64,000 nucleotides of DNA from Octopus bimaculoides. Its lineage: Eukaryota. Under the pieces are notes generated by a model. It saw only the letters and a list, made by a program, of their open reading frames with translations, was not told the DNA's origin and searched no databases. The stretch lies in assembly GCF_001194135.2 (NCBI RefSeq), contig NC_069008.1:8867163-8931162 (forward strand), in the 5' to 3' direction. Positions 46,101 to 61,605 of the stretch are shown here, piece by piece. Position 1 is the first letter of the stretch. Each line of letters starts with the position of its first letter. The translations under genes were made by a program, and so were the position numbers.

Positions 46101-48626
46101 TTACATACACTCAATCTACAGGATATAAGCAATTATTTGGTGACAGTTTTGTTAAAAAGTATCCATTTTTCTGGAAGTTATGAGGCAACAAGGTTGGTGG
46201 GGTATTAAACTGTAGTTATGCCTTTTTTCAATAAAAGTTAATGTTAACTTCCATTACATTTTCAAAGAATTAACAGATTAACAAAGTTAACTTTTTGATT
46301 AATAGTGCCTAACTCTGTATGTGTGTGTGTGTGTGTGTATATATATACATACACACACACTCACAGGCACAGGCATAGCTATGTGGTAAAAAGTTTGCTT
46401 CCCAACCACTTGGTTCCAAGTTTAGTCTCACTGCATGGCACCTTGGGCATGTGTCTTCTATAGCCTTGGGCCAACCAAAGCCTTGTTAGTGAATTTGGTA
46501 GATGGAAACTGAAAGAAGCCCATAGTATATATGTGTGTGTTTGTGTTTCTCCCCCTCCACTGCTTGACAACCAGTGTTTGTGTGTTTAGATCCCTGATAC
46601 TTAGCTCTTCAGCAAAAGAGATCAAGAAAATAAGTATCAAGCTGATAAAAAAAAAAGTACTGGGGTTGATTCATTCAAGGCAGTGCCCCAGCATGGTTGG
46701 AACAAGTAGAAGCAACAAAATGTGATATATTATATATGTATGTGTAACTTATCTTTCAGGTTTAATTGACTGTTATATGGCCAGCCACCGACCCAGAGAG
46801 GCGATCAATTTAGCTGGGAAAGCAGTGAGACAGTTGGGTAACAATGCAAGATCTTTGACAGTAAGTCAACACACTTTGTTTTCTTTTGACTAAACTGAAG
46901 GTATTGGGATTATTTTAATTATCACAGTGATGGAAGGGATCTTTCTTTTAATTTTGTATTTACATCTAATCTATTTATAAAATAGATTTACATCTAATCA
47001 TTTATAAAAGCCACATGTTTGGTTGCGCAATAAGAAGTTTGATTCCCAACCATATGGTTCCAGGTTCAGTCCTACTGTGTGGCATCTTGGACAAGTGTCT
47101 TCTACTACAACCTCCTGCTGACCAAAGCCATTAAGTAATTGGTACTTGTTTATACAGCTATCCTCATCCATATCTATCACGTATCCATGCCAGCACAGTC
47201 TTTTTTCTTATACACTACATCTGATTCCTCTTATGCCCAGGCTTTCTCTCATCACATTTCTACTAGGCTGTTCATGCACACTTTCATTGCACATCAAACA
47301 GAGCATTCTCGCATTATTTCTTTCCAGTCTTTTCAAGTCCTTTGTATTCAGGGCTCATGTCTCACTACTCTACAGTATCACAGTTCTTGCCAGCAGTGAT
47401 AGTAGGTCCCGGACTTTTTTGTAACCCATTCTTACTCTGGCTGCTATACTTCCAGAGCAACCATCTCCTAGGTAGCAAAATCTACCGACTGCTAGCAAGC
47501 CATCCTATCGTTTCATAGTACAATACTGCTCCAGTGTATTTATCACATACAAAACTTATCTTCTCTGCTAGTCTGCCTGTGATTCCATTACATGTTTTGT
47601 ATGTTCATAGCTTGCGTTAGATACAGTATATGGAGTCTATATTCACTCCTTTACATATCGTGCAAGGGTATTTCCCTAAAAGTACTAAAACAGGGTTCTG
47701 TTTTCTTTCCTATTTACTAAAACTTACATCATTGCTAAGTTTACTTTAACATCTCTCAATTCCAGGTTTAGCTTCCATGCCCAGAATTTCATATATTCAA
47801 TTTGTTAGAAATATAATTAAAAATATAGTAGAAATACTTAAAATCTGAGCTGGGCTCTATGGCTATTTCTGTGTGCATAGAGTTACCATTGGCTGGTTTG
47901 CAAATGAAATAATATCAAAATTTCAGACATTATCATCATTATTTTAGAATTTGCTTTTCCATGCTGGTATGGGTTGGGTGGAACAGTTTGATATAGTACT
48001 TTATAGCCAGATGGTAGTCCCTTTAGTTACAGCTTATAATAAGCTGGCGTAGCTGTGTGGTAAGAAGTTTACTTCCCAAGCCTTTTGTTTTAGGTTCAGT
48101 CCCACTGGATGGCACCTTGGGCAAATGTCTTCTACTAGAGTCTTCATTATCATCACCATTGTTTGACAATAGCTGGTCAGGTAGAAGCCTGCACCCTGCT
48201 TCTGTGCCCTGGGCCAACCAAAGCCTTGTGAGTATATTTGGTAGATGGAAACCAAAAGAAGCCTATTGTACACGCACACTATATATATATATATATAAAA
48301 AGTGTTTGTATGTGTGTGTGCATATGTTCCTTATGCATTCCAAAACCAAGGTGCCCAATCTGACATATAGGGTTTCAAAAGATTCAGTACTATTTCGGCT
48401 ACCAGCTAATCTTTATTTTCATTGACATATTTGCATTACAAAAATTTAAAATTTAAAATTATAATCTTTTCCATAAGTCAACTATTGTAAACATTTTATA
48501 TGACAACGATGATGACGATGTCACATTTTCTATATGAGTGTGTACTTTAAAAGACATCCATCATCACAACACACACCTTCACTCACTCACTGTATTTCTC
48601 TGTCTCTCTTTCTCTCTTTCGCATAT

Positions 48627-51600: not shown

Positions 51601-54301
51601 ATAGATAAACAAAGGCTCCGATATGGCTGTCTTTGGCCTTTCAGATGCTGATAGGGCCAATGAGGTAGACCAGTATCTAATGGACTGTTATGTAAGCAGT
51701 AATGAAGCCGCTTGGAGACTCCTTCATTTCCCCATTCATGACCGATATCTCACAGTTGTCCACCTCACTGTTCATTTAAAAAATGGCCAAAGAGTTTATT
51801 TTGATCCATTGAATTCCAAAAGAGTTAGGACAAATATATGCACCACAGGCAACGATTCTCACAGCATTCTTTGACCTGTGTGGATGTGATGCATTTGCCG
51901 TGACCATCTTCTACCCAGACATACCAAAGTATTACACCTGGAATAACCATATTAAGAAGTGGAAGAGGAGAAAGCTTGGTGTAACCGTCAAATGGCAGCC
52001 ACACATAAAAAAAAGTAATGCTCCAGGTCGAGTTTATACAGTCCACCCTAAAAACTTTGAATGCTACTGTCTCCGGATGCTCCTCCACAAAGTTGCTGGA
52101 CCAACGTCATTCAAAGACCTTAAAATGATAAACTCCTTGATTTGCGAAGCATTTCAATGAGCCTGCCAACTCAGAGGTCTTCTTAAAGATGATGGTCACT
52201 GGAGTTTAGCTCTTTCTGATGCAGAAGCCACATGCACAGCTTAACAACTAAGAAGATTCTTCGCCATCATGTTATACCATTGTGATTTACCGAATCCACT
52301 ACAACTTTGGGAAAACTACAATGACAGCTTATCTGATGACATCCTTCATGAAGCTTGATGGTTGCATGGGCCAAGTGTCTCCTACTCAGATGTTATATAC
52401 ACCAAATCATTATTGCATTTAGAAGACATGCTTAATTCCATTGGGGCCAAAAGCTTAACCAACTATGGCATTCCAACACCTTCAGCTAAATATCACGGCC
52501 TTTCAAGAGAAGTCATTCGAGAAAGAGCATACAACTTGGATGCCCTGAAAAAGCAACTTGATGAAAGTGAACCATTATTGCAAGCTGAGCAAAGGTCTGT
52601 TTACAATGAAATAGTAGTGTCTACCTTGCAAAGAGAAGGACATCTTTTCTTCATTGATGCACCAGGAGGAAAGGGGAAAACATTTCTAATTAACCTACTT
52701 CTGGCAAAAATAAGGCAGATGGGAAATATAGCGATTGCAGTCACATCATCAGGGATAACAGCAACTTTGTTAATAGGTGGACGAACAGCTCACTCAACGT
52801 TCAAATTACCTTTCAATTTGACTTCAATGGATGCCCAAATATGCAGTATTTCAAAATGATCACTGACAGTGGAAGTTATGCTAACAAACTACACTTATTG
52901 TCTGGGATGAATGCACAGTGGCATACTGTGGTGCACTAGAAGCCCTAGATAGGTCACTGAGAGACATTAGAAACAATACTGCCATTATGGGGTGCTTAAC
53001 TGTTGTCCTTGCAGGGGATTTCCATCAAATATTACCAGTCATACCACAGGGTACGTGAGCTGATGAGATCTATGAATGTCTGAAGTCTTCACTTCTGTGG
53101 AGGTTTGTTCATCAGCTTTCATTAAGCAATAATATGCAAGCTCATCTCTACAACAACCCTTTAGCTGAGGAATTCTCTCATCACCTTTGAATAACACCCT
53201 GCTGCAGCATGGACTGCAATGTGGGCACATGGTGTCTACATTGGCTGAGCTTAAAGAAAAGGTATTCCCCACATTGCAAGACAACTTCAAAAACAGCATG
53301 GTTTGCAGAGAGGGCTATTTTAGCACTTCAGAAAGAAAGCGTTGATAAAGTAAACCATGAACTCCTCCACATTCTAACTGGAGATGTTTCAACATTTGTC
53401 TCCATTGCTACTGATAACGAACATGCCGCTGTGGAGAATCCAGTTGAATTTCTCAACTCTCTACAACCCACAGGACTGCCACCACATACGTTGTTCCTAA
53501 AGAAAGGTGCATCTATCATGCACTTGAGGAATTTGGAACCATCATGACTTTGCAATGGTACAAGATTGATTATAACTACAATGACAAGTCATGTCCTAGA
53601 AGCAACCATTATTGCTGGTTGCCATGAAGGAGAGATTGCATACATTCCATGCATGCCCCTTATTCCCTCAAATATGCCATTTCATTTCAAGCGCCTCCAG
53701 TTTCCAGTGCAATTGTGCTTTGCTATGATGATCAACAAAGTTCAGGGTCAAACTTTAAAAATGGTGGGCCTCAATTTACATCTACGCTGCTTTTTTTCAT
53801 GGACAACTGTATGTCGCATGCTCTTGAGTTAGCAATGCAGATGACTTGTATATTTATTCTACCAACACTGGGCTTACACAAAACATAGTTTACCCAGAAG
53901 CATTGTCGGTTTCACTTAACATATGCTGAAGTATGCAGTCTGCCCAAACATTACAGATTTGGTGCTTTTCACAATGAAGCAGCTTTCTTTCCATGTACCT
54001 TACTTTCTGCAATACAAATACCTCTACGTCCTCATATGTCATCCAATTCTTTAAATCCGTAAGTCTAGGTCATTTTGGGGGCAATTTTAAGATTTTATTC
54101 TAATCTAAGCTGCTATTCTACATGTTTTTGGTGACAACAATTTCAGCATTGTTCATCACAAAATGACTGAAAAACATGTTTATAAAAAAAGAGTTGTTTG
54201 CTTCACGCACCTCGTGTGCCAATTCTACCCATAAAAAAGAAACAAATAATACAATGTGGCTATAGGTTATAACACCAGGGCAACGCCAGGATGCATTGCT
54301 A

Positions 54302-54373
<72 letters not shown>

Positions 54374-57300
54374 ATGTGTTTGTGTGGAGGCATGTGATTT
54401 AGTGGATAAGGAGTTGGATTCATGATCATAAGATTGTGGTTTCAATTCCTGGACCAGGCAATGCATTCTGTTCTTGAGCAAAACATTTCATTTCATATTT
54501 CCCCAGTCCATTCCACTGGCAAGAATGAGTAATGATGGACTAGCATCCCATCCAGGGGGAGAATAAATACACCATGGAAACCAGGAAACCCACCTTTTTA
54601 ATGTATGGCTCAGGAAGGATCTTTATCCTTTTACATATATACACATACATACTCCTACATGTATGTAAGTGTGTATATGTTTGTCCCCCATGTCTTGACA
54701 TTGCATGGTAGTTGTAGAGGAGTGTTTCTGTCATATACAAGCAGTGTCATTCATTTCCAGTATCCCGCAAAAAAACCATGCCTGGCAATTGGAGAAAATA
54801 TTACCTAACTTGGAAGCAGGTGACGGTTGGCAACAGAAGTGCATCTGGTGGTAGAAAATCTGCCTCAGCAAGCCCCATCCAACCCATGGAAAAGAAGATG
54901 TTAAAATGGTGATAGCATGCAAAGAGATGAAAATATAACATGTTCTGCACGTGACAACTGAACAGATGAATGTGTGACACATTTGCTAAAATTTCTTTTT
55001 CAGTTACTAATCATCTTTTGCAAAACTGTTGACTAAACATATTTAGATGTTTGCGAATATTTTGGCTTATTGTCATACTGCTAACCTTCACTTTCTCTGT
55101 TCTAGCTTTCTGTCCCTATACAAACTGAAAGACTCTCTTTCCTTTTCTCTCTCTCTCTCACCTGCAATATGCTGTGTGGGTTATGTTTATGTCCCACTTT
55201 AAACTCTATGTATAAATATATTTCATTCTCTCCCTATCAGCTCTATGCCTCTGTACTGTCTGAAGAACCTACAACAGCAATAAAGGTAAGTCTTTCTCTC
55301 TCTCTCTCCATATATATATGCTGGAAATTAATACTTTTGTATTGAAATATTTTTCATTGATATATATATATATATACATACATATATATGTGTGTGTGAA
55401 AGTGCATGGCCTATGGTTGGGGTGTTGAACTCACAATCATTACCTCATAGTTTCGATTCCTAGGCTGGCATTACATTGTGTTCTTGAGCAAAACACCTCA
55501 TTTCACATTAATCCTGTACACTCAGCTATAAATGATTGATGGATTAGCAATGGTGGCATCATTTGAAAGTTGCAACAATGCAAGAAAGCACATTGTGGAC
55601 CTGCAGTGTATAACACCATCTGACAGCCTGGTCGATAGTGATACAGTGATATATACATCTCAGTGATTGCCAAGCGAACTTCTTAACCACAGGCTTAACC
55701 AGTACAATGTTGGCATTAGGAAGGGCATTCAGTTGTAGAAACCATGCCAAAACAGATGACTGAAACCTGGTGCGGCTTTCCAGCATGGAAAATGGACTTT
55801 AAAGGATGATGATGAGATTTATGATTTTGTCTAGACTCCTAAACCCATTGCAGTAGTTAATTAACAACTATACAGAAAACAGACTCAATTGTGAAAGTCT
55901 ACATGGACCTTTAAACATAACTAGTAGTCATTTATGTATATATATATATATGTATATGTGCCAGTGATATGTAAGTGGCACCTGTGCTGGTAGCATGTAA
56001 AAGGGTATCTAGTACACTTTGTAAATGGTTGGTATTAGGAAGGGCATCCAGCCATAGAAACCAAGCCAAGACAGACAACTGGAGCCCAGTGCAGCTCTCT
56101 GGTTTACCATCTTTAGTCAAACCATCTAACCCATCCCAGCAGGAAAAACAGACATTAAATGATAATGATGATATATAGCTTTCTACAGTTCTATATTTAA
56201 GAGATGAGGAATTATTTACATTATTTACATTTGACGGATATTTATCTTCATCTTGTTTGTTGTTAACACAACGTTTCGGCTGATATACCCTCCAGCCTTC
56301 GTCAGGTGTCTTGGGGAAATTTCGAACCTGGGTTCTCATTCCTAACGATGTTACTATTATTATATTGTTATTATTATTATTCCTATTATTAATCAGGTCG
56401 CTGCCGTGAATCGAACTCGGAACCTTGGGGTTAGTAGCCCGCGCTCTTAACCACTACGCCATATGCCCGTGGGCAATTATGGGGTGAATTTTAAGGCTTA
56501 TAANNNNNNNNNNNNNNNNNNNNNNNNNNNNNNNNNNNNNNNNNNNNNNNNNNNNNNNNNNNNNNNNNNNNNNNNNNNNNNNNNNNNNNNNNNNNNNNNN
56601 NNNNNNNNNNNNNNNNNNNNNNNNNNNNNNNNNNNNNNNNNNNNNNNNNNNNNNNNNNNNNNNNNNNNNNNNNNNNNNNNNNNNNNNNNNNNNNNNNNNN
56701 NNNNNNNNNNNNNNNNNNNNNNNNNNNNNNNNNNNNNNNNNNNNNNNNNNNNNNNNNNNNNNNNNNNNNNNNNNNNNNNNNNNNNNNNNNNNNNNNNNNN
56801 NNNNNNNNNNNNNNNNNNNNNNNNNNNNNNNNNNNNNNNNNNNNNNNNNNNNNNNNNNNNNNNNNNNNNNNNNNNNNNNNNNNNNNNNNNNNNNNNNNNN
56901 NNNNNNNNNNNNNNNNNNNNNNNNNNNNNNNNNNNNNNNNNNNNNNNNNNNNNNNNNNNNNNNNNNNNNNNNNNNNNNNNNNNNNNNNNNNNNNNNNNNN
57001 NNNNNNNNNNNNNNNNNNNNNNNNNNNNNNNNNNNNNNNNNNNNNNNNNNNNNNNNNNNNNNNNNNNNNNNNNNNNNNNNNNNNNNNNNNNNNCACTACT
57101 TATAAACATTGCTCGATGTTTTAGGCACTGAGCAATTCCTCTCTTTACACTGTATGGATGGTGGGAATTGAAGTTAAGGTATCGTCCAGTGAAGGTTGGC
57201 TTGCGATATACGGATGTCCTGAATCCATACTCGGTGCGTGTTAATAATACGTCCAGGAATGCCAGCTAATTGTTCTGTTCCTTTTCCAGAACAATCAGCT

Positions 57301-60300
57301 GGCATTCCTGGACGTATTAATAACACGCACCGAGTATGGATTCAGGACATCCGTATATCGCAAGCCAACCTTCACTGGACGATACCTTAACTTCAATTCC
57401 CACCATCCATACAGTGTAAAGAGAGGAATTGCTCAGTGCCTAAAACATCGAGCAAATAATAGAAGTAGCGATCGTGATACCCACCACAAAGAAATGATCA
57501 AGCTCAGTAAGAATCTATTAAGAAACAACTACCCCAAGAACATACTATCTACTCCAATTATGAAGAAAACAGAGGATGAAACCAAAAAACTGTCTACAGT
57601 CTGTCTACCCTATGTGAAAGGCCTCTCCGAAAAGATACAAAAGATATGCGGCCCATATGACATCAGGGCAGTATTCAAGAGCAATACAACACTTCGCAAA
57701 TATCTCCTTCGGGTAAAACCACCAACAGAAGAGAATATGACCAAAAACTGCGTGTACTCCATCCCATGCAGCTGTGGTAGATTATACAAAGGCGAAACAT
57801 GTCGCCCCCTCAAAATAAGGGTAGAAGAACATCACAANNNNNNNNNNNNNNNNNNNNNNNNNNNNNNNNNNNNNNNNNNNNNNNNNNNNNNNNNNNNNNN
57901 NNNNNNNNNNNNNNNNNNNNNNNNNNNNNNNNNNNNNNNNNNNNNNNNNNNNNNNNNNNNNNNNNNNNNNNNNNNNNNNNNNNNNNNNNNNNNNNNNNNN
58001 NNNNNNNNNNNNNNNNNNNNNNNNNNNNNNNNNNNNNNNNNNNNNNNNNNNNNNNNNNNNNNNNNNNNNNNNNNNNNNNNNNNNNNNNNNNNNNNNNNNN
58101 NNNNNNNNNNNNNNNNNNNNNNNNNNNNNNNNNNNNNNNNNNNNNNNNNNNNNNNNNNNNNNNNNNNNNNNNNNNNNNNNNNNNNNNNNNNNNNNNNNNN
58201 NNNNNNNNNNNNNNNNNNNNNNNNNNNNNNNNNNNNNAATAATAGATTTATAAGCCTTAAAATTCACCCCATAATTGCCCACGGGCATATGGCGTAGTGG
58301 TTAAGAGCGCGGGCTACTAACCCCAAGGTTCCGAGTTCGATTCACGGCAGCGACCTGATTAATAATAGGAATAATAATAATAATAGTAACATCGTTAGGA
58401 ATGAGAACCCAGGTTCGAAATTTCCCCAAGACACCTGACGAAGGCTGGAGGGTATATCAGCCGAAACGTTGTGTTAACAACAAACAAGATGAGGATAAAT
58501 ATCCGTCAAATGTAGATAATGTATATAGCTTTCTGTCTGTATGTCTATAACCACCTATCTGTCATTGTTTCTATTCCTATCACTCTCTGACTATATGTGT
58601 GTGTGTGTATACACACACATAGACTGACTGACATGCAAACACATACATATATGTATATAATCTATGTCCACCACTTTTCCCAGGCCAAACAATATGTCGA
58701 GAAAGCAATGAAACTGGACAGTTCATATTTGGAGGCTGTGTATGTGATGACTGTGATACTGGGCAAGGAACAGCAGTACGACAAGGCTATTGAACTGTGA
58801 GTAACCACTCCCCTATTGAGTAAACTCTGGTTTTCAGTTTTATTTTCCTGTCTGTATTGCCAAGCCGATTATTATTTTTTCTAGCAGGACCCATGAATAT
58901 TTCACAGAATTAATTGTAAACCTATTGTGTTATTCCTGAAAACTTTATCCAAAAAGCCTGAAAATGTAGCCTGTGTTGTGCCGGTATCAAAAGATAGTTG
59001 CTCATCTGTTATTCATTGAAAAGTGAAGGAAATTGGAATACAATGATTACTTAATGCACCTTATATATATATACTTTATATACTTTATGCACAATTTTAT
59101 AGACTTAATACACAGCATTCATAAAATAAATATTCATTCTTATTTTTCCATTTTCCCCATAAGCAGAAAAAATTACATTTTAAAATTTACATGGTCACAA
59201 TTTCATATCTAGAAAACGAAAATTTTATAGTAAAAACAATTATTTTATTTGTAAAATGTATGGTCACAATTTCGCAAGGGTAAAACTTTAATGCAACATG
59301 GCATACTCTGAAAACCACATTGTTGGTTACTTAAGCCAAGGTAATGGGTCAAACCAATGCACATTTCGATGTGCATACACCTTTCAATACAATGCTTCTT
59401 TGCAGATTATGTTCTTTGTGTAAGTTCTCCCTCTTCTTTTCCCTTGTTTGTCAGTGTTGATAACTTTACCTCTCACCTCAGATAATTTGCAAGTCCTTGA
59501 GAATGCAATATATAGCTGACCATGGCCGAGTACAGGTTCGGGCAAGAACAGCTCCAATTCGTTAAATGTCCACCCTTGTGATTTATTGATAGTCATTGCA
59601 TATGACAGGCAAACGGGAAACTGGTTTCCTTCTAAAGTGAATGGCAAGTTTGGGATGCACATGTTTCAAGTGATAGGTGATATAAAAAGACTTAGTTCAG
59701 TTAAAACAAAAATTACTTTTCACTAAGCACTCACTATCGCCACTTCCACCACCACCACCACCATCATCTCTCTCTCTCTACCTTTCTTTAATCTCACCAT
59801 CACAACATCACCCCTCTGCTAAAATTATATTCCTAACTCTTCTCTATATCATTACCTTCAACTATTTTAACCACGCAATAAATATTACATTCCCCCTAAC
59901 ATGTCGTTGGATGCTTCTCTCTCCCACTTGTTCTTTCTCTCTCTTTCTGCCTCACTCTTCTCCTTATCCTCTTTTTCTCTCTCCTTTTTCTTTCTCTTGT
60001 TCTCTCTTTCCCTTCAACTAATCATATGAAAGTGTTACAATCACATTCCTTCTACCTCACGTCATGGATGCTTCTCTCACCCTCTTTTTCTCTCTCTCAC
60101 TTTTCTTTAATCATGTGAAAGCGTTTCTGATGGGCTAAAGTAACATGACAAGCAGAATTATTATAAGATTAGAATTGTCATTACTGTTTTTTTCTTATTA
60201 GGGCAGTTGAGACAGGATATGTAAAATGTCAAATAAAATACCATTTAAGTCCTTCAAATCCACTAGCATAGCTAGAGTGTGTGTCGGCCAGGGCAGCCCT

Positions 60301-61133: not shown

Positions 61134-61605
61134 GTAAACTGAATTTTGCTTTTCATTTTGTTTATTTTTGTGTATATATCACATCATCATATAATGTCTG
61201 TCTTCCATGCTGGTATGGGTTGGACAGTTTGACGGGAGCTGGCCAGGCAGAGGACTGCATCAAGCTCCACTGTCTGTATTGGTATGCCCTTCCTAACACC
61301 AGCTGCCTTACGGAATGGATTTATATAGCTTGTGACATCTGTGCTGCTGACACATGAAAGACACCCAGTACACTCTATGGAGTGGTTGGCATTAGGAAGA
61401 ACATCTAGCTATAAGCGAAATCAGAATGGAACCTGGTGTCAGCTCTGGTCAAACCATCCAACCCATGCCAGCATGAAAACAGCCATTAAAGGATGGTGAT
61501 ATATAGGCACTGTTGCTTAGTTAAGAAACTTACTTTGCAATCTTATGGTTTTAGGTTCAGTCTCACTGCATTGCACTTTGGGCAACTGTCTTCTAAAGCC
61601 ATTGG

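What the first reader, a model, noticed from the sequence alone, without database searches (positions are those of the whole stretch)
56172..58534. A ~2.3-kb palindromic Penelope insertion with a 13-bp target-site duplication inside an essential-gene intron
Seen: the two halves are inverted copies that meet at a short loop near 57275-57290. TATATAGCTTTCT flanks both ends (56172-56184 and 58522-58534). The arms differ by several substitutions and by (AAT)n length, and the left arm has a ~32-bp extra tail. The TSD and arm differences argue for a real insertion rather than an assembly fold-back. Known: PLE insertions often have inverted 5' segments, and coleoids show very extensive ADAR editing. 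Inference: ANAPC7 pre-mRNA could form a >1-kb dsRNA stem just upstream of exon 14, a potential ADAR or Dicer substrate.
Basis: partly seen in the sequence, partly recalled or inferred. Interest (0 to 1): 0.7.

Follow-up and report, generated by a model that had tools for sequence, protein, structure and literature searches.

The report
Head-to-head Penelope retrotransposon insertion in intron
This is a real but ordinary insertion of a very abundant Penelope-like retrotransposon, laid down as two inverted partial copies in an intron of the octopus-type ANAPC7 gene. It shows the known signatures of this element class, so it matters mainly as a likely source of long double-stranded intron RNA.

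Summary
The 13-mer TATATAGCTTTCT occurs only twice in the window, exactly at the two borders. Between them lie two inverted partial copies of one element that meet at 57287/57288.

The element is an endonuclease-bearing Penelope-like element (PLE):
- It encodes a reverse transcriptase followed by GIY-YIG.
- It carries a PLE-type minimal hammerhead-like motif in the 3' region.
- It has a 34-nt "tail" on one end only.

It belongs to a family with thousands of copies in this genome. All 14 other head-to-head dimers I examined have one tailed and one tail-less end. Of the 13 checked for a target-site duplication, 10 have a perfect 12-14 bp repeat around the whole dimer. The structure is therefore a single-event product of the published PLE kind, not an assembly fold-back.

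Caveats:
- 990 of the 2337 bases are gap Ns. Intact copies predict about 2.13 kb, and only 474 bp of arm pairing is readable.
- The exact junction rests on one internal contig.

The host gene is an APC7 orthologue, and the insertion ends 162 nt before a 3' splice site. The exon number is unverified, and APC7 is not known to be essential. A stem of about 1 kb in the pre-mRNA is plausible, and ADAR hyper-editing is likely by analogy, but neither was tested here. Novelty and interest are low.

The parts
56172..56184 (.). Left copy of the 13-bp target-site duplication, TATATAGCTTTCT
   Evidence: only two occurrences in the window, both at the borders; 0.02 expected by chance.
56185..56218 (-). 34-nt PLE 'tail': the extra 3'-terminal extension, present on this arm only
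   Evidence: present in canonical copies (ends at U3 positions 313-319) and absent from the right arm. Matches the published 30-40 bp one-sided tail (PMC8557442, PMC11167929).
56185..57288 (-). Left arm: a 5'-truncated PLE copy on the minus strand, with tailed 3' end. It covers unit positions about 1548-2633 of a roughly 2.63-kb element and includes the gap 56504-57093.
   Evidence: The expected missing length of 586 nt agrees with the 590 N written.
56265..56310 (-). Minimal hammerhead-like motif of the left arm. It is antisense in the host transcript.
   Evidence: exact reverse complement of 58430-58475.
57278..57288 (-). Inner end of the left arm. It was read as a 'loop' but is templated element sequence; 57287-57288 (CA) is a 2-nt microhomology shared with the right arm.
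   Evidence: other copies match query positions 1-67 or 66-121, and the full junction is unique to this locus..
57287..58521 (+). Right arm: a 5'-truncated PLE copy on the plus strand, with tail-less 3' end. It covers unit positions about 1559-2599 and includes the gap 57838-58237.
   Evidence: About 207-228 nt are expected at the gap, against 400 N written.
57287..57837 (+). Open reading-frame fragment covering the C-terminal part of the reverse transcriptase, a linker and the start of the GIY-YIG endonuclease (..VYSIPCSCGRLYKGETCRPLKIRVEEHH)
   Evidence: 42% identity, E 8e-43, to P0058 residues 372-557, whose Pfam GIY-YIG domain is 527-598.
58430..58475 (+). PLE-type minimal hammerhead-like motif: GACAC / CUGACGA / A / GGCUG..CAGCC / GAAA / CGU / U / GUGUU
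   Evidence: Read directly. It has the extra base between positions 9 and 10.1, the G10.1-C11.1 pair, the palindromic ACGU and a 5-bp helix I, as described in PMC4209133. Rfam models do not detect it. Cleavage was not tested.
58522..58534 (.). Right copy of the 13-bp target-site duplication
55241..55285 (+). Upstream ANAPC7 exon (LYASVLSEEPTTAIK), with AG and GTAAGT splice signals
58684..58796 (+). Downstream ANAPC7 exon (AKQYVEKAMKLD...). Its 3' splice site lies 162 nt after the insertion.

Best explanation
One retrotransposition event of an endonuclease-bearing Penelope-like element produced a head-to-head dimer in the ANAPC7 intron at 55286-58683.

Proposed steps:
1. The element's GIY-YIG nuclease cut both target strands 13 bp apart, which gives the duplication.
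2. Each freed 3' end primed reverse transcription of element RNA. One started at the extreme 3' start site (left arm, with the 34-nt tail). The other started at the internal start site 34 nt upstream (right arm, tail-less).
3. Both cDNAs stopped after about 1.05 kb, at unit positions 11 nt apart.
4. Their 3' ends were joined through a 2-nt CA/TG microhomology and filled in.

What is shown:
- the duplication;
- the two kinds of end;
- the microhomology junction;
- the same architecture recurring across the family.

What is inferred: the order of events and the enzymology. These are taken from in-vitro work on a lizard PLE.

Consequence: because both arms lie in one intron, the pre-mRNA can fold into a near-perfect stem of about 1 kb. 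That is the kind of substrate ADAR hyper-edits. The coding sequence and the splice signals are untouched.
For: Border and identity:
- The border 13-mer is unique to the two borders.
- A near-full copy has an 855-aa frame with RVT_1.
- Homologues at 42-46% identity carry Pfam GIY-YIG C-terminal to RVT_1, and the window fragment aligns across it.
- A minimal hammerhead-like motif has the four published PLE-specific traits (PMC4209133).

Family size: 2073 and 2852 first-look candidates for two query segments.

Family-wide architecture:
- All 14 other head-to-head dimers have one end at U3 313-319 and the other at 286-293, with no intermediate ends.
- 10 of the 13 checked for a duplication have a perfect 12-14 bp direct repeat around the whole dimer.
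- About 16 of 39 copies chosen only for their coding part have an inverted partner at the 5' end.
- Most junctions overlap by 1-8 nt.

This locus:
- The junction is unique in the genome.
- Outside the 15-nt cluster beside the gap, the arms differ at 4 of 441 sites. The closest other sampled copy differs by 1.4% or more in the outer part and 2.2% or more in the inner part.

Literature:
- An inverted 5'-truncated copy and a one-sided 30-40 bp tail are typical of PLEs (PMC8557442).
- A purified PLE protein cleaves and extends both strands and starts at two adjacent internal sites that bracket the tail (PMC11167929).

Folding: the central 377 nt folds at -333 kcal/mol, z = -47.
Against: - 42% of the interval is unread. 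The inner junction lies on one 744-nt contig of a high-copy repeat placed between two gaps, so its placement cannot be verified without reads.
- The near-symmetry of the arms (11-nt offset) is not predicted by two independent cDNAs. Most other dimers are asymmetric, and I found no sharp truncation hot spot at this position.
- No empty allele or other species could be examined.
- Pfam and PDB searches do not detect GIY-YIG directly in this family's own sequence.
- No RNA data were available for the double-stranded RNA consequence.
Confidence: 0.85

Rival explanations
1. Snap-back origin. A single cDNA primed at one nick folded back on its own 3' end (CA pairing with TG, leaving a 9-nt loop). 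It then copied itself, giving a near-perfect palindrome in one step.
For: - The arms end only 11 nt apart, with a 2-nt overlap and no filler.
- The arms are about 99% alike outside one cluster.
- A few other copies show near-symmetric turn-backs, for example L048 with an 18-nt offset.
Against: - A self-copy would reproduce the 34-nt tail on the second arm. Instead the right arm ends at the family's standard tail-less site.
- Every dimer examined has one end of each kind, including strongly asymmetric ones that a snap-back cannot make.
Confidence: 0.1
2. Assembly artefact. The central contig (57094-57837) is a chimeric fold-back or belongs to another copy, and was scaffolded here by mistake.
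For: - It is a short-read scaffold with gaps on both sides of the contig.
- The family has thousands of copies.
- Five mismatches cluster at the contig end, 57102-57108.
- PLE structures are known to upset short-read assemblies (PMC8557442).
Against: - The two outer contigs each join unique flank to an element 3' end in opposite orientation, with the same 13-mer. The head-to-head arrangement therefore does not depend on the central contig.
- The left gap length fits the expected arm (590 against 586).
- The same architecture is seen in ungapped loci: L023, L030, L031.
- This rival could change only the arm lengths and the junction.
Confidence: 0.07
3. Two independent insertions of the same family, in opposite orientation, into the same site.
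For: The family is very abundant, and the site sits at the end of a SINE-like repeat with a microsatellite tail.
Against: - There is one duplication around the whole unit and none at the inner junction.
- The 5'-truncated ends are joined directly by microhomology.
- The one-tail rule holds in all dimers.
Confidence: 0.02

Closest known systems
Canonical EN+ Penelope-like elements (Penelope/Poseidon, Neptune, Nematis), as described by Craig et al. 2021 (PMC8557442)
   Same: - Reverse transcriptase followed by C-terminal GIY-YIG.
- Frequent 5' truncation.
- An inverted 5'-truncated copy next to the main copy.
- A 30-40 bp tail at one end only.
- A hammerhead motif in the terminal repeat region.
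- A target-site duplication.
   Different: Nothing essential. Here both arms are long and nearly equal (about 1.05 kb each). In most sampled dimers of the family the tail-less arm is short (about 40-400 bp). The clade within PLEs was not determined.
PAc (Poseidon of Anolis carolinensis) in-vitro system, PMC11167929
   Same: Two adjacent start sites for reverse transcription define the tail, and both target strands are cleaved and extended. This matches the two end types 34 nt apart and the outward-facing 3' ends seen here.
   Different: That work is biochemical and in a lizard element. Here only genomic footprints are seen. The strict rule of one tailed and one tail-less end per dimer is my observation on 15 loci. 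It is not a published rule that I could check.
L1 twin priming (inversion with 5' truncation); recalled from memory, no paper was read for it here
   Same: The second target strand primes a second cDNA, and the two are joined by microhomology. This gives an inverted segment inside one duplication.
   Different: In L1 the inverted and direct parts are different, non-overlapping stretches of one RNA, and the element ends in poly(A). Here both arms carry the same 3' terminal sequence, so the product is a true hairpin-forming repeat. There is no poly(A).
Intronic inverted repeat pairs as ADAR hyper-editing substrates (inverted Alus; lizard Penelope), PMC5625713
   Same: Two inverted copies in one pre-mRNA give long, nearly perfect double-stranded RNA. 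Octopus shows an exceptionally high hyper-editing signal, and lizard Penelope is massively edited.
   Different: Editing of this particular locus has not been examined.

Membership tests
Penelope-like element (EN+) | Reverse transcriptase domain | tested here: met
   RVT_1 at residues 435-624 of the 855-aa frame of family copy L041, E 1.2e-10, above the curated cut-off. The window arms keep only the part downstream of it. Placement in the PLE/telomerase-like clade by phylogeny was not done.
Penelope-like element (EN+) | GIY-YIG endonuclease fused C-terminal to the reverse transcriptase | tested here: met
   The test is indirect. Pfam and PDB do not score this family's own sequence. Homologues P0058 and P0061 (42-46% identity) score GIY-YIG above the cut-off, C-terminal to RVT_1. 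The window's VYSIPCSCGRLYKGETCRPLKIRVEEH aligns to that domain.
Penelope-like element (EN+) | Complex inverted or tandem terminal repeats (pseudo-LTRs), with an inverted 5'-truncated copy adjacent | tested here: met
   Seen in the window, in 14 other loci and in about 16 of 39 unselected copies. L041 has both an inverted and a direct partial terminal copy upstream of the body.
Penelope-like element (EN+) | [quoted passage not shown] | tested here: met
   The 34-nt tail is at 56185-56218 only. Ends across the family are bimodal (286-293 or 313-319), and all 15 dimers have one of each.
Penelope-like element (EN+) | Hammerhead ribozyme motif in the terminal repeat | tested here: inconclusive
   The sequence at 58430-58475 fits the published minimal PLE hammerhead traits (PMC4209133). 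However, no Rfam hammerhead model matches it. Paralogous copies give no covariation, and cleavage cannot be tested here.
Penelope-like element (EN+) | Target-site duplication flanking the whole unit | tested here: met
   13 bp here. Perfect 12-14 bp repeats in 10 of 13 other dimers.
L1-type twin-priming inversion | Inverted and direct segments are different parts of one RNA; poly(A) at the 3' end | tested here: not met
   Both arms carry the same 3' terminal 285 nt, and there is no poly(A).
DNA transposon or foldback element with terminal inverted repeats | Arms are non-coding terminal repeats recognised by a transposase | tested here: not met
   The arms are the reverse-transcriptase/endonuclease coding region and 3' untranslated region of a retroelement. 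Solo 5'-truncated copies are common.
tRNA-derived SINE | A defined 5' end at a tRNA-like head, recognised as a tRNA | tested here: not met
   The tRNA-like stretch (58283-58355) is not called by ARAGORN or Rfam. Short copies have variable 5' ends upstream of it, as 5'-truncated PLE copies would.

The most novel reading that the evidence does not exclude
This PLE family's way of integrating produces hairpin-forming inverted dimers on a large scale: about 40% of sampled copies, in a family with thousands of copies. It could therefore be a major source of the exceptionally high load of long double-stranded RNA and of hyper-editing reported for Octopus bimaculoides. The ANAPC7 hairpin is the longest stem among the roughly 25 dimers I could resolve. 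It would then be heavily edited or diced, and might influence use of the exon 162 nt downstream.
Probability: 0.2. Interest if true: 0.45.

Novelty: already known. Interest (0 to 1): 0.15.

Why it matters
As a single locus it matters little. It is one copy of a very abundant retrotransposon, in an intron, leaving the exons and splice signals intact.

Its use is as a clean worked example:
- The 13-bp duplication, the one-sided 34-nt tail and the microhomology junction fit the two-strand, two-start-site model proposed from in-vitro work on a lizard PLE.
- The family gives many further examples in one genome.

If the RNA consequence holds, elements of this kind would help explain why the octopus transcriptome is so rich in long double-stranded RNA and hyper-editing.

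Tried and rejected
- Rfam scans of the region and of a near-full copy gave only spurious microRNA-like hits, caused by the hairpin itself. No hammerhead model matched.
- ARAGORN found no tRNA.
- Pfam and PDB searches of this family's own endonuclease part found nothing. The domain was reached only through homologues.
- I tested whether the terminal 319-nt unit is an independent SINE. It is not: the 5' ends are variable.
- I tested whether unit position about 1548-1559 is a truncation hot spot that would explain the symmetric arms. Three of about 60 sampled ends fall there (L003, L047, L039), but the ends are otherwise spread broadly. The test is not convincing either way.
- A search for an empty-site haplotig in the same assembly found none. 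The left flank is a high-copy SINE-like repeat.
- The homology of the left flank to the flank of L005 turned out to be that same SINE-like repeat, not part of the element.
- Exon numbering of ANAPC7 was not attempted beyond five exons.
Full report
**What is in the sequence**

The interval 56172-58534 has three readable blocks separated by two N runs: 56504-57093 (590 N) and 57838-58237 (400 N). The window holds 14 N runs of irregular length. This is what a scaffolded short-read assembly looks like, so these are estimated gaps.

The inverted repeats are real:
- 57096-57277 pairs with 57287-57468 (182 nt, 96%).
- 56213-56363 pairs with 58377-58527 (98%).
- 56363-56503 pairs with 58248-58388 (99%).

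The 13-mer TATATAGCTTTCT sits at 56172-56184 and 58522-58534 and nowhere else in the window. Shuffles give 0.02 matches.

- 2 substitutions in 274 nt of the outer part.
- 7 substitutions in 182 nt of the inner part, five of them clustered at 57102-57108 beside the gap.
- An 11-nt (AAT)n indel.
- A 34-nt extension on the left arm only (56185-56218).

**Gap test**

The window is G000:C28:8867163-8931162, in a 2.34-Gb genome. Other copies of the element without gaps show that the blocks on either side of each gap are colinear, in the same orientation, with one continuous element.

I used a near-full copy (L041) as a ruler, with a unit of 2599 nt plus the 34-nt tail:
- The left arm spans unit positions 1548-2633.
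- The right arm spans unit positions 1559-2599.
- The left gap should hide 586 nt (590 N written).
- The right gap should hide about 207-228 nt (400 N written).

The insertion is therefore about 2.13 kb. Continuity across the gaps is inferred, not read.

**What the element is**

The plus strand of the right arm is open from 57287 to the gap and ends in ..VYSIPCSCGRLYKGETCRPLKIRVEEHH.

- L041 has an 855-aa frame with Pfam RVT_1.
- Pfam and PDB do not score the endonuclease part of this family directly.
- A database search found 2629 relatives. Several, at 42-46% identity, carry Pfam GIY-YIG above the cut-off, C-terminal to RVT_1. The window fragment aligns across that domain (E 8e-43).

Reverse transcriptase followed by GIY-YIG is the architecture of endonuclease-bearing Penelope-like elements (PMC8557442).

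In the 3' untranslated part, at 58430-58475 (and in reverse complement at 56265-56310), the sequence reads GACAC-CUGACGA-A-GGCUG..CAGCC-GAAA-CGU-U-GUGUU. This shows:
- the hammerhead core;
- the extra base between positions 9 and 10.1;
- the G10.1-C11.1 pair;
- a palindromic ACGU in place of helix III;
- a 5-bp helix I.

These are the traits published for metazoan PLE minimal hammerheads, which are thought to act as dimers (PMC4209133). The motif is nearly invariant in 55 copies. Rfam's hammerhead models do not detect it, and I could not test cleavage, so I call it hammerhead-like.

A tRNA-like stretch (58283-58355) is not recognised by ARAGORN or Rfam. Short copies have variable 5' ends, so the terminal unit is the element's own 3' end and not a SINE.

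**The family-wide pattern**

The family is very abundant: 2073 and 2852 first-look candidates for two query segments.

- The 3' ends of copies fall into two classes only: U3 positions 286-293 (tail-less) or 313-319 (tailed).
- I found 14 further loci with head-to-head copies. Every one has one tailed and one tail-less outer end, as the window does.
- In 10 of the 13 checked, a perfect 12-14 bp direct repeat flanks the whole dimer. One more has an imperfect 13-mer, one an 8-mer, and one lies in a microsatellite.
- Among 39 copies chosen only because they contain the coding segment, about 16 have an inverted partner at the 5' end. Most junctions overlap by 1-8 nt, without filler.
- Three of the dimers lie in loci with no gaps at all (L023, L030, L031).

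This matches the published description of PLE insertions: an inverted 5'-truncated copy next to the main copy, and a 30-40 bp tail at one end only. The same paper warns that such structures trouble short-read assemblies (PMC8557442).

**The junction**

The 9 nt between the arms are not filler. All other copies match either up to 57288 (left arm) or from 57287 (right arm). The full junction occurs only here. The arms therefore overlap by CA, and their inner ends lie 11 nt apart in element coordinates.

**How it most likely arose**

A purified lizard PLE protein cleaves and extends both target strands. It starts reverse transcription at two adjacent internal sites that bracket the tail (PMC11167929). 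The footprints here fit that model:
1. Staggered nicks 13 bp apart.
2. One cDNA started at the outer site (tailed left arm) and one at the inner site (tail-less right arm).
3. The two 3' ends were joined by microhomology.

The footprints are shown. The order of events and the enzymology are inferred.

The near-equal arm lengths are not explained by this model.
- A snap-back of a single cDNA would explain them. But it predicts a tail on both arms and cannot make the asymmetric dimers, which obey the same one-tail rule.
- I found no convincing truncation hot spot at this position.

Outside the cluster beside the gap, the arms differ at 4 of 441 sites. That is less than their difference from any other sampled copy, and it fits one event with one RNA source.

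**Artefact?**

The head-to-head arrangement does not depend on the central contig. Each outer contig joins unique flank to an element 3' end in opposite orientation, with the same 13-mer. Only the arm lengths and the exact junction depend on the central 744-nt contig, and its placement needs long reads to confirm. No empty-site haplotig exists in the assembly.

**Host gene**

Five plus-strand exons with good splice signals were spliced in silico..-42286, 46760-46860, 55241-55285, 58684-58796 and one ending at 61134. The product aligns without gaps to human APC7 residues 373-536, E 2.4e-41.

- The insertion lies in the intron 55286-58683.
- It ends 162 nt before the 3' splice site.
- I did not verify the exon number.
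- APC7 is not clearly essential. A fly null strain is viable, and human cells proliferate without it (PMC6289045).

**Consequence**

- The central 377 nt alone folds into a near-perfect hairpin (-333 kcal/mol, z = -47).
- With continuous arms the stem would be about 1.04 kb, the longest among the roughly 25 dimers I could resolve.
- Octopus bimaculoides has an exceptionally strong hyper-editing signal and an exceptionally high potential for long double-stranded RNA. Penelope is the massively edited element in lizard (PMC5625713).

Editing of this intron is therefore likely, but it was not examined here. Nothing suggests an effect on the protein.

**Verdict**

The thing itself is a typical product of a known element class in a repeat-rich genome. 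Novelty: already known. Interest: low.

Noticed in passing
window 55994-56171 (a second copy at about 55702-55780): This is a high-copy SINE-like repeat ending in an (ATGAT)n-like tail, with more than 1300 first-look matches in the genome. The PLE target site starts right at its 3' end. Another PLE dimer (L005) lies about 55 nt downstream of a copy of the same repeat. This may reflect the microsatellite insertion bias reported for PLEs, or it may be chance.
   Followed up: partly
window 52359-53547 (+), possibly on to about 53900; also 59384-59665 (-): Broken reading frames here match the PIF1-like helicase and the Pif1 2B domain (E 3e-24 and 5e-10). This is probably a decayed Helitron-type element in the preceding ANAPC7 intron. 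A similar-looking fragment on the minus strand, downstream of the exon, gave no Pfam hit.
   Followed up: partly
family loci L005, L006, L008, L003 and the window (57838): Assembly gaps in many copies of this element start at nearly the same element position (unit about 2083-2118) and end at about 2294-2384. This stretch seems to break the short-read assembly systematically. The reason was not examined.
   Followed up: no
window 58283-58355 (+) and 56396-56468 (-): The element's 3' untranslated region contains a tRNA-like stretch with A-box-like and B-box-like sequences (TGGCGTAGTGG, GAGTTCGATTC). ARAGORN and Rfam do not call it. Its origin and role are unknown.
   Followed up: partly
L041 (G000:C9:26716663-26723700), minus strand: This is a near-full-length copy. 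From 5' to 3' it has an 86-nt inverted tailed 3' piece, a 150-nt direct tailed 3' piece, a body of about 2.3 kb with an 855-aa open frame, and a tail-less 3' end. Inverted and direct pseudo-LTRs therefore co-occur in one unit.
   Followed up: partly
window 57102-57108: Five of the seven inner-arm mismatches are packed into 7 nt at the very end of the contig, beside the left gap. This could be a contig-end assembly error rather than real divergence.
   Followed up: no
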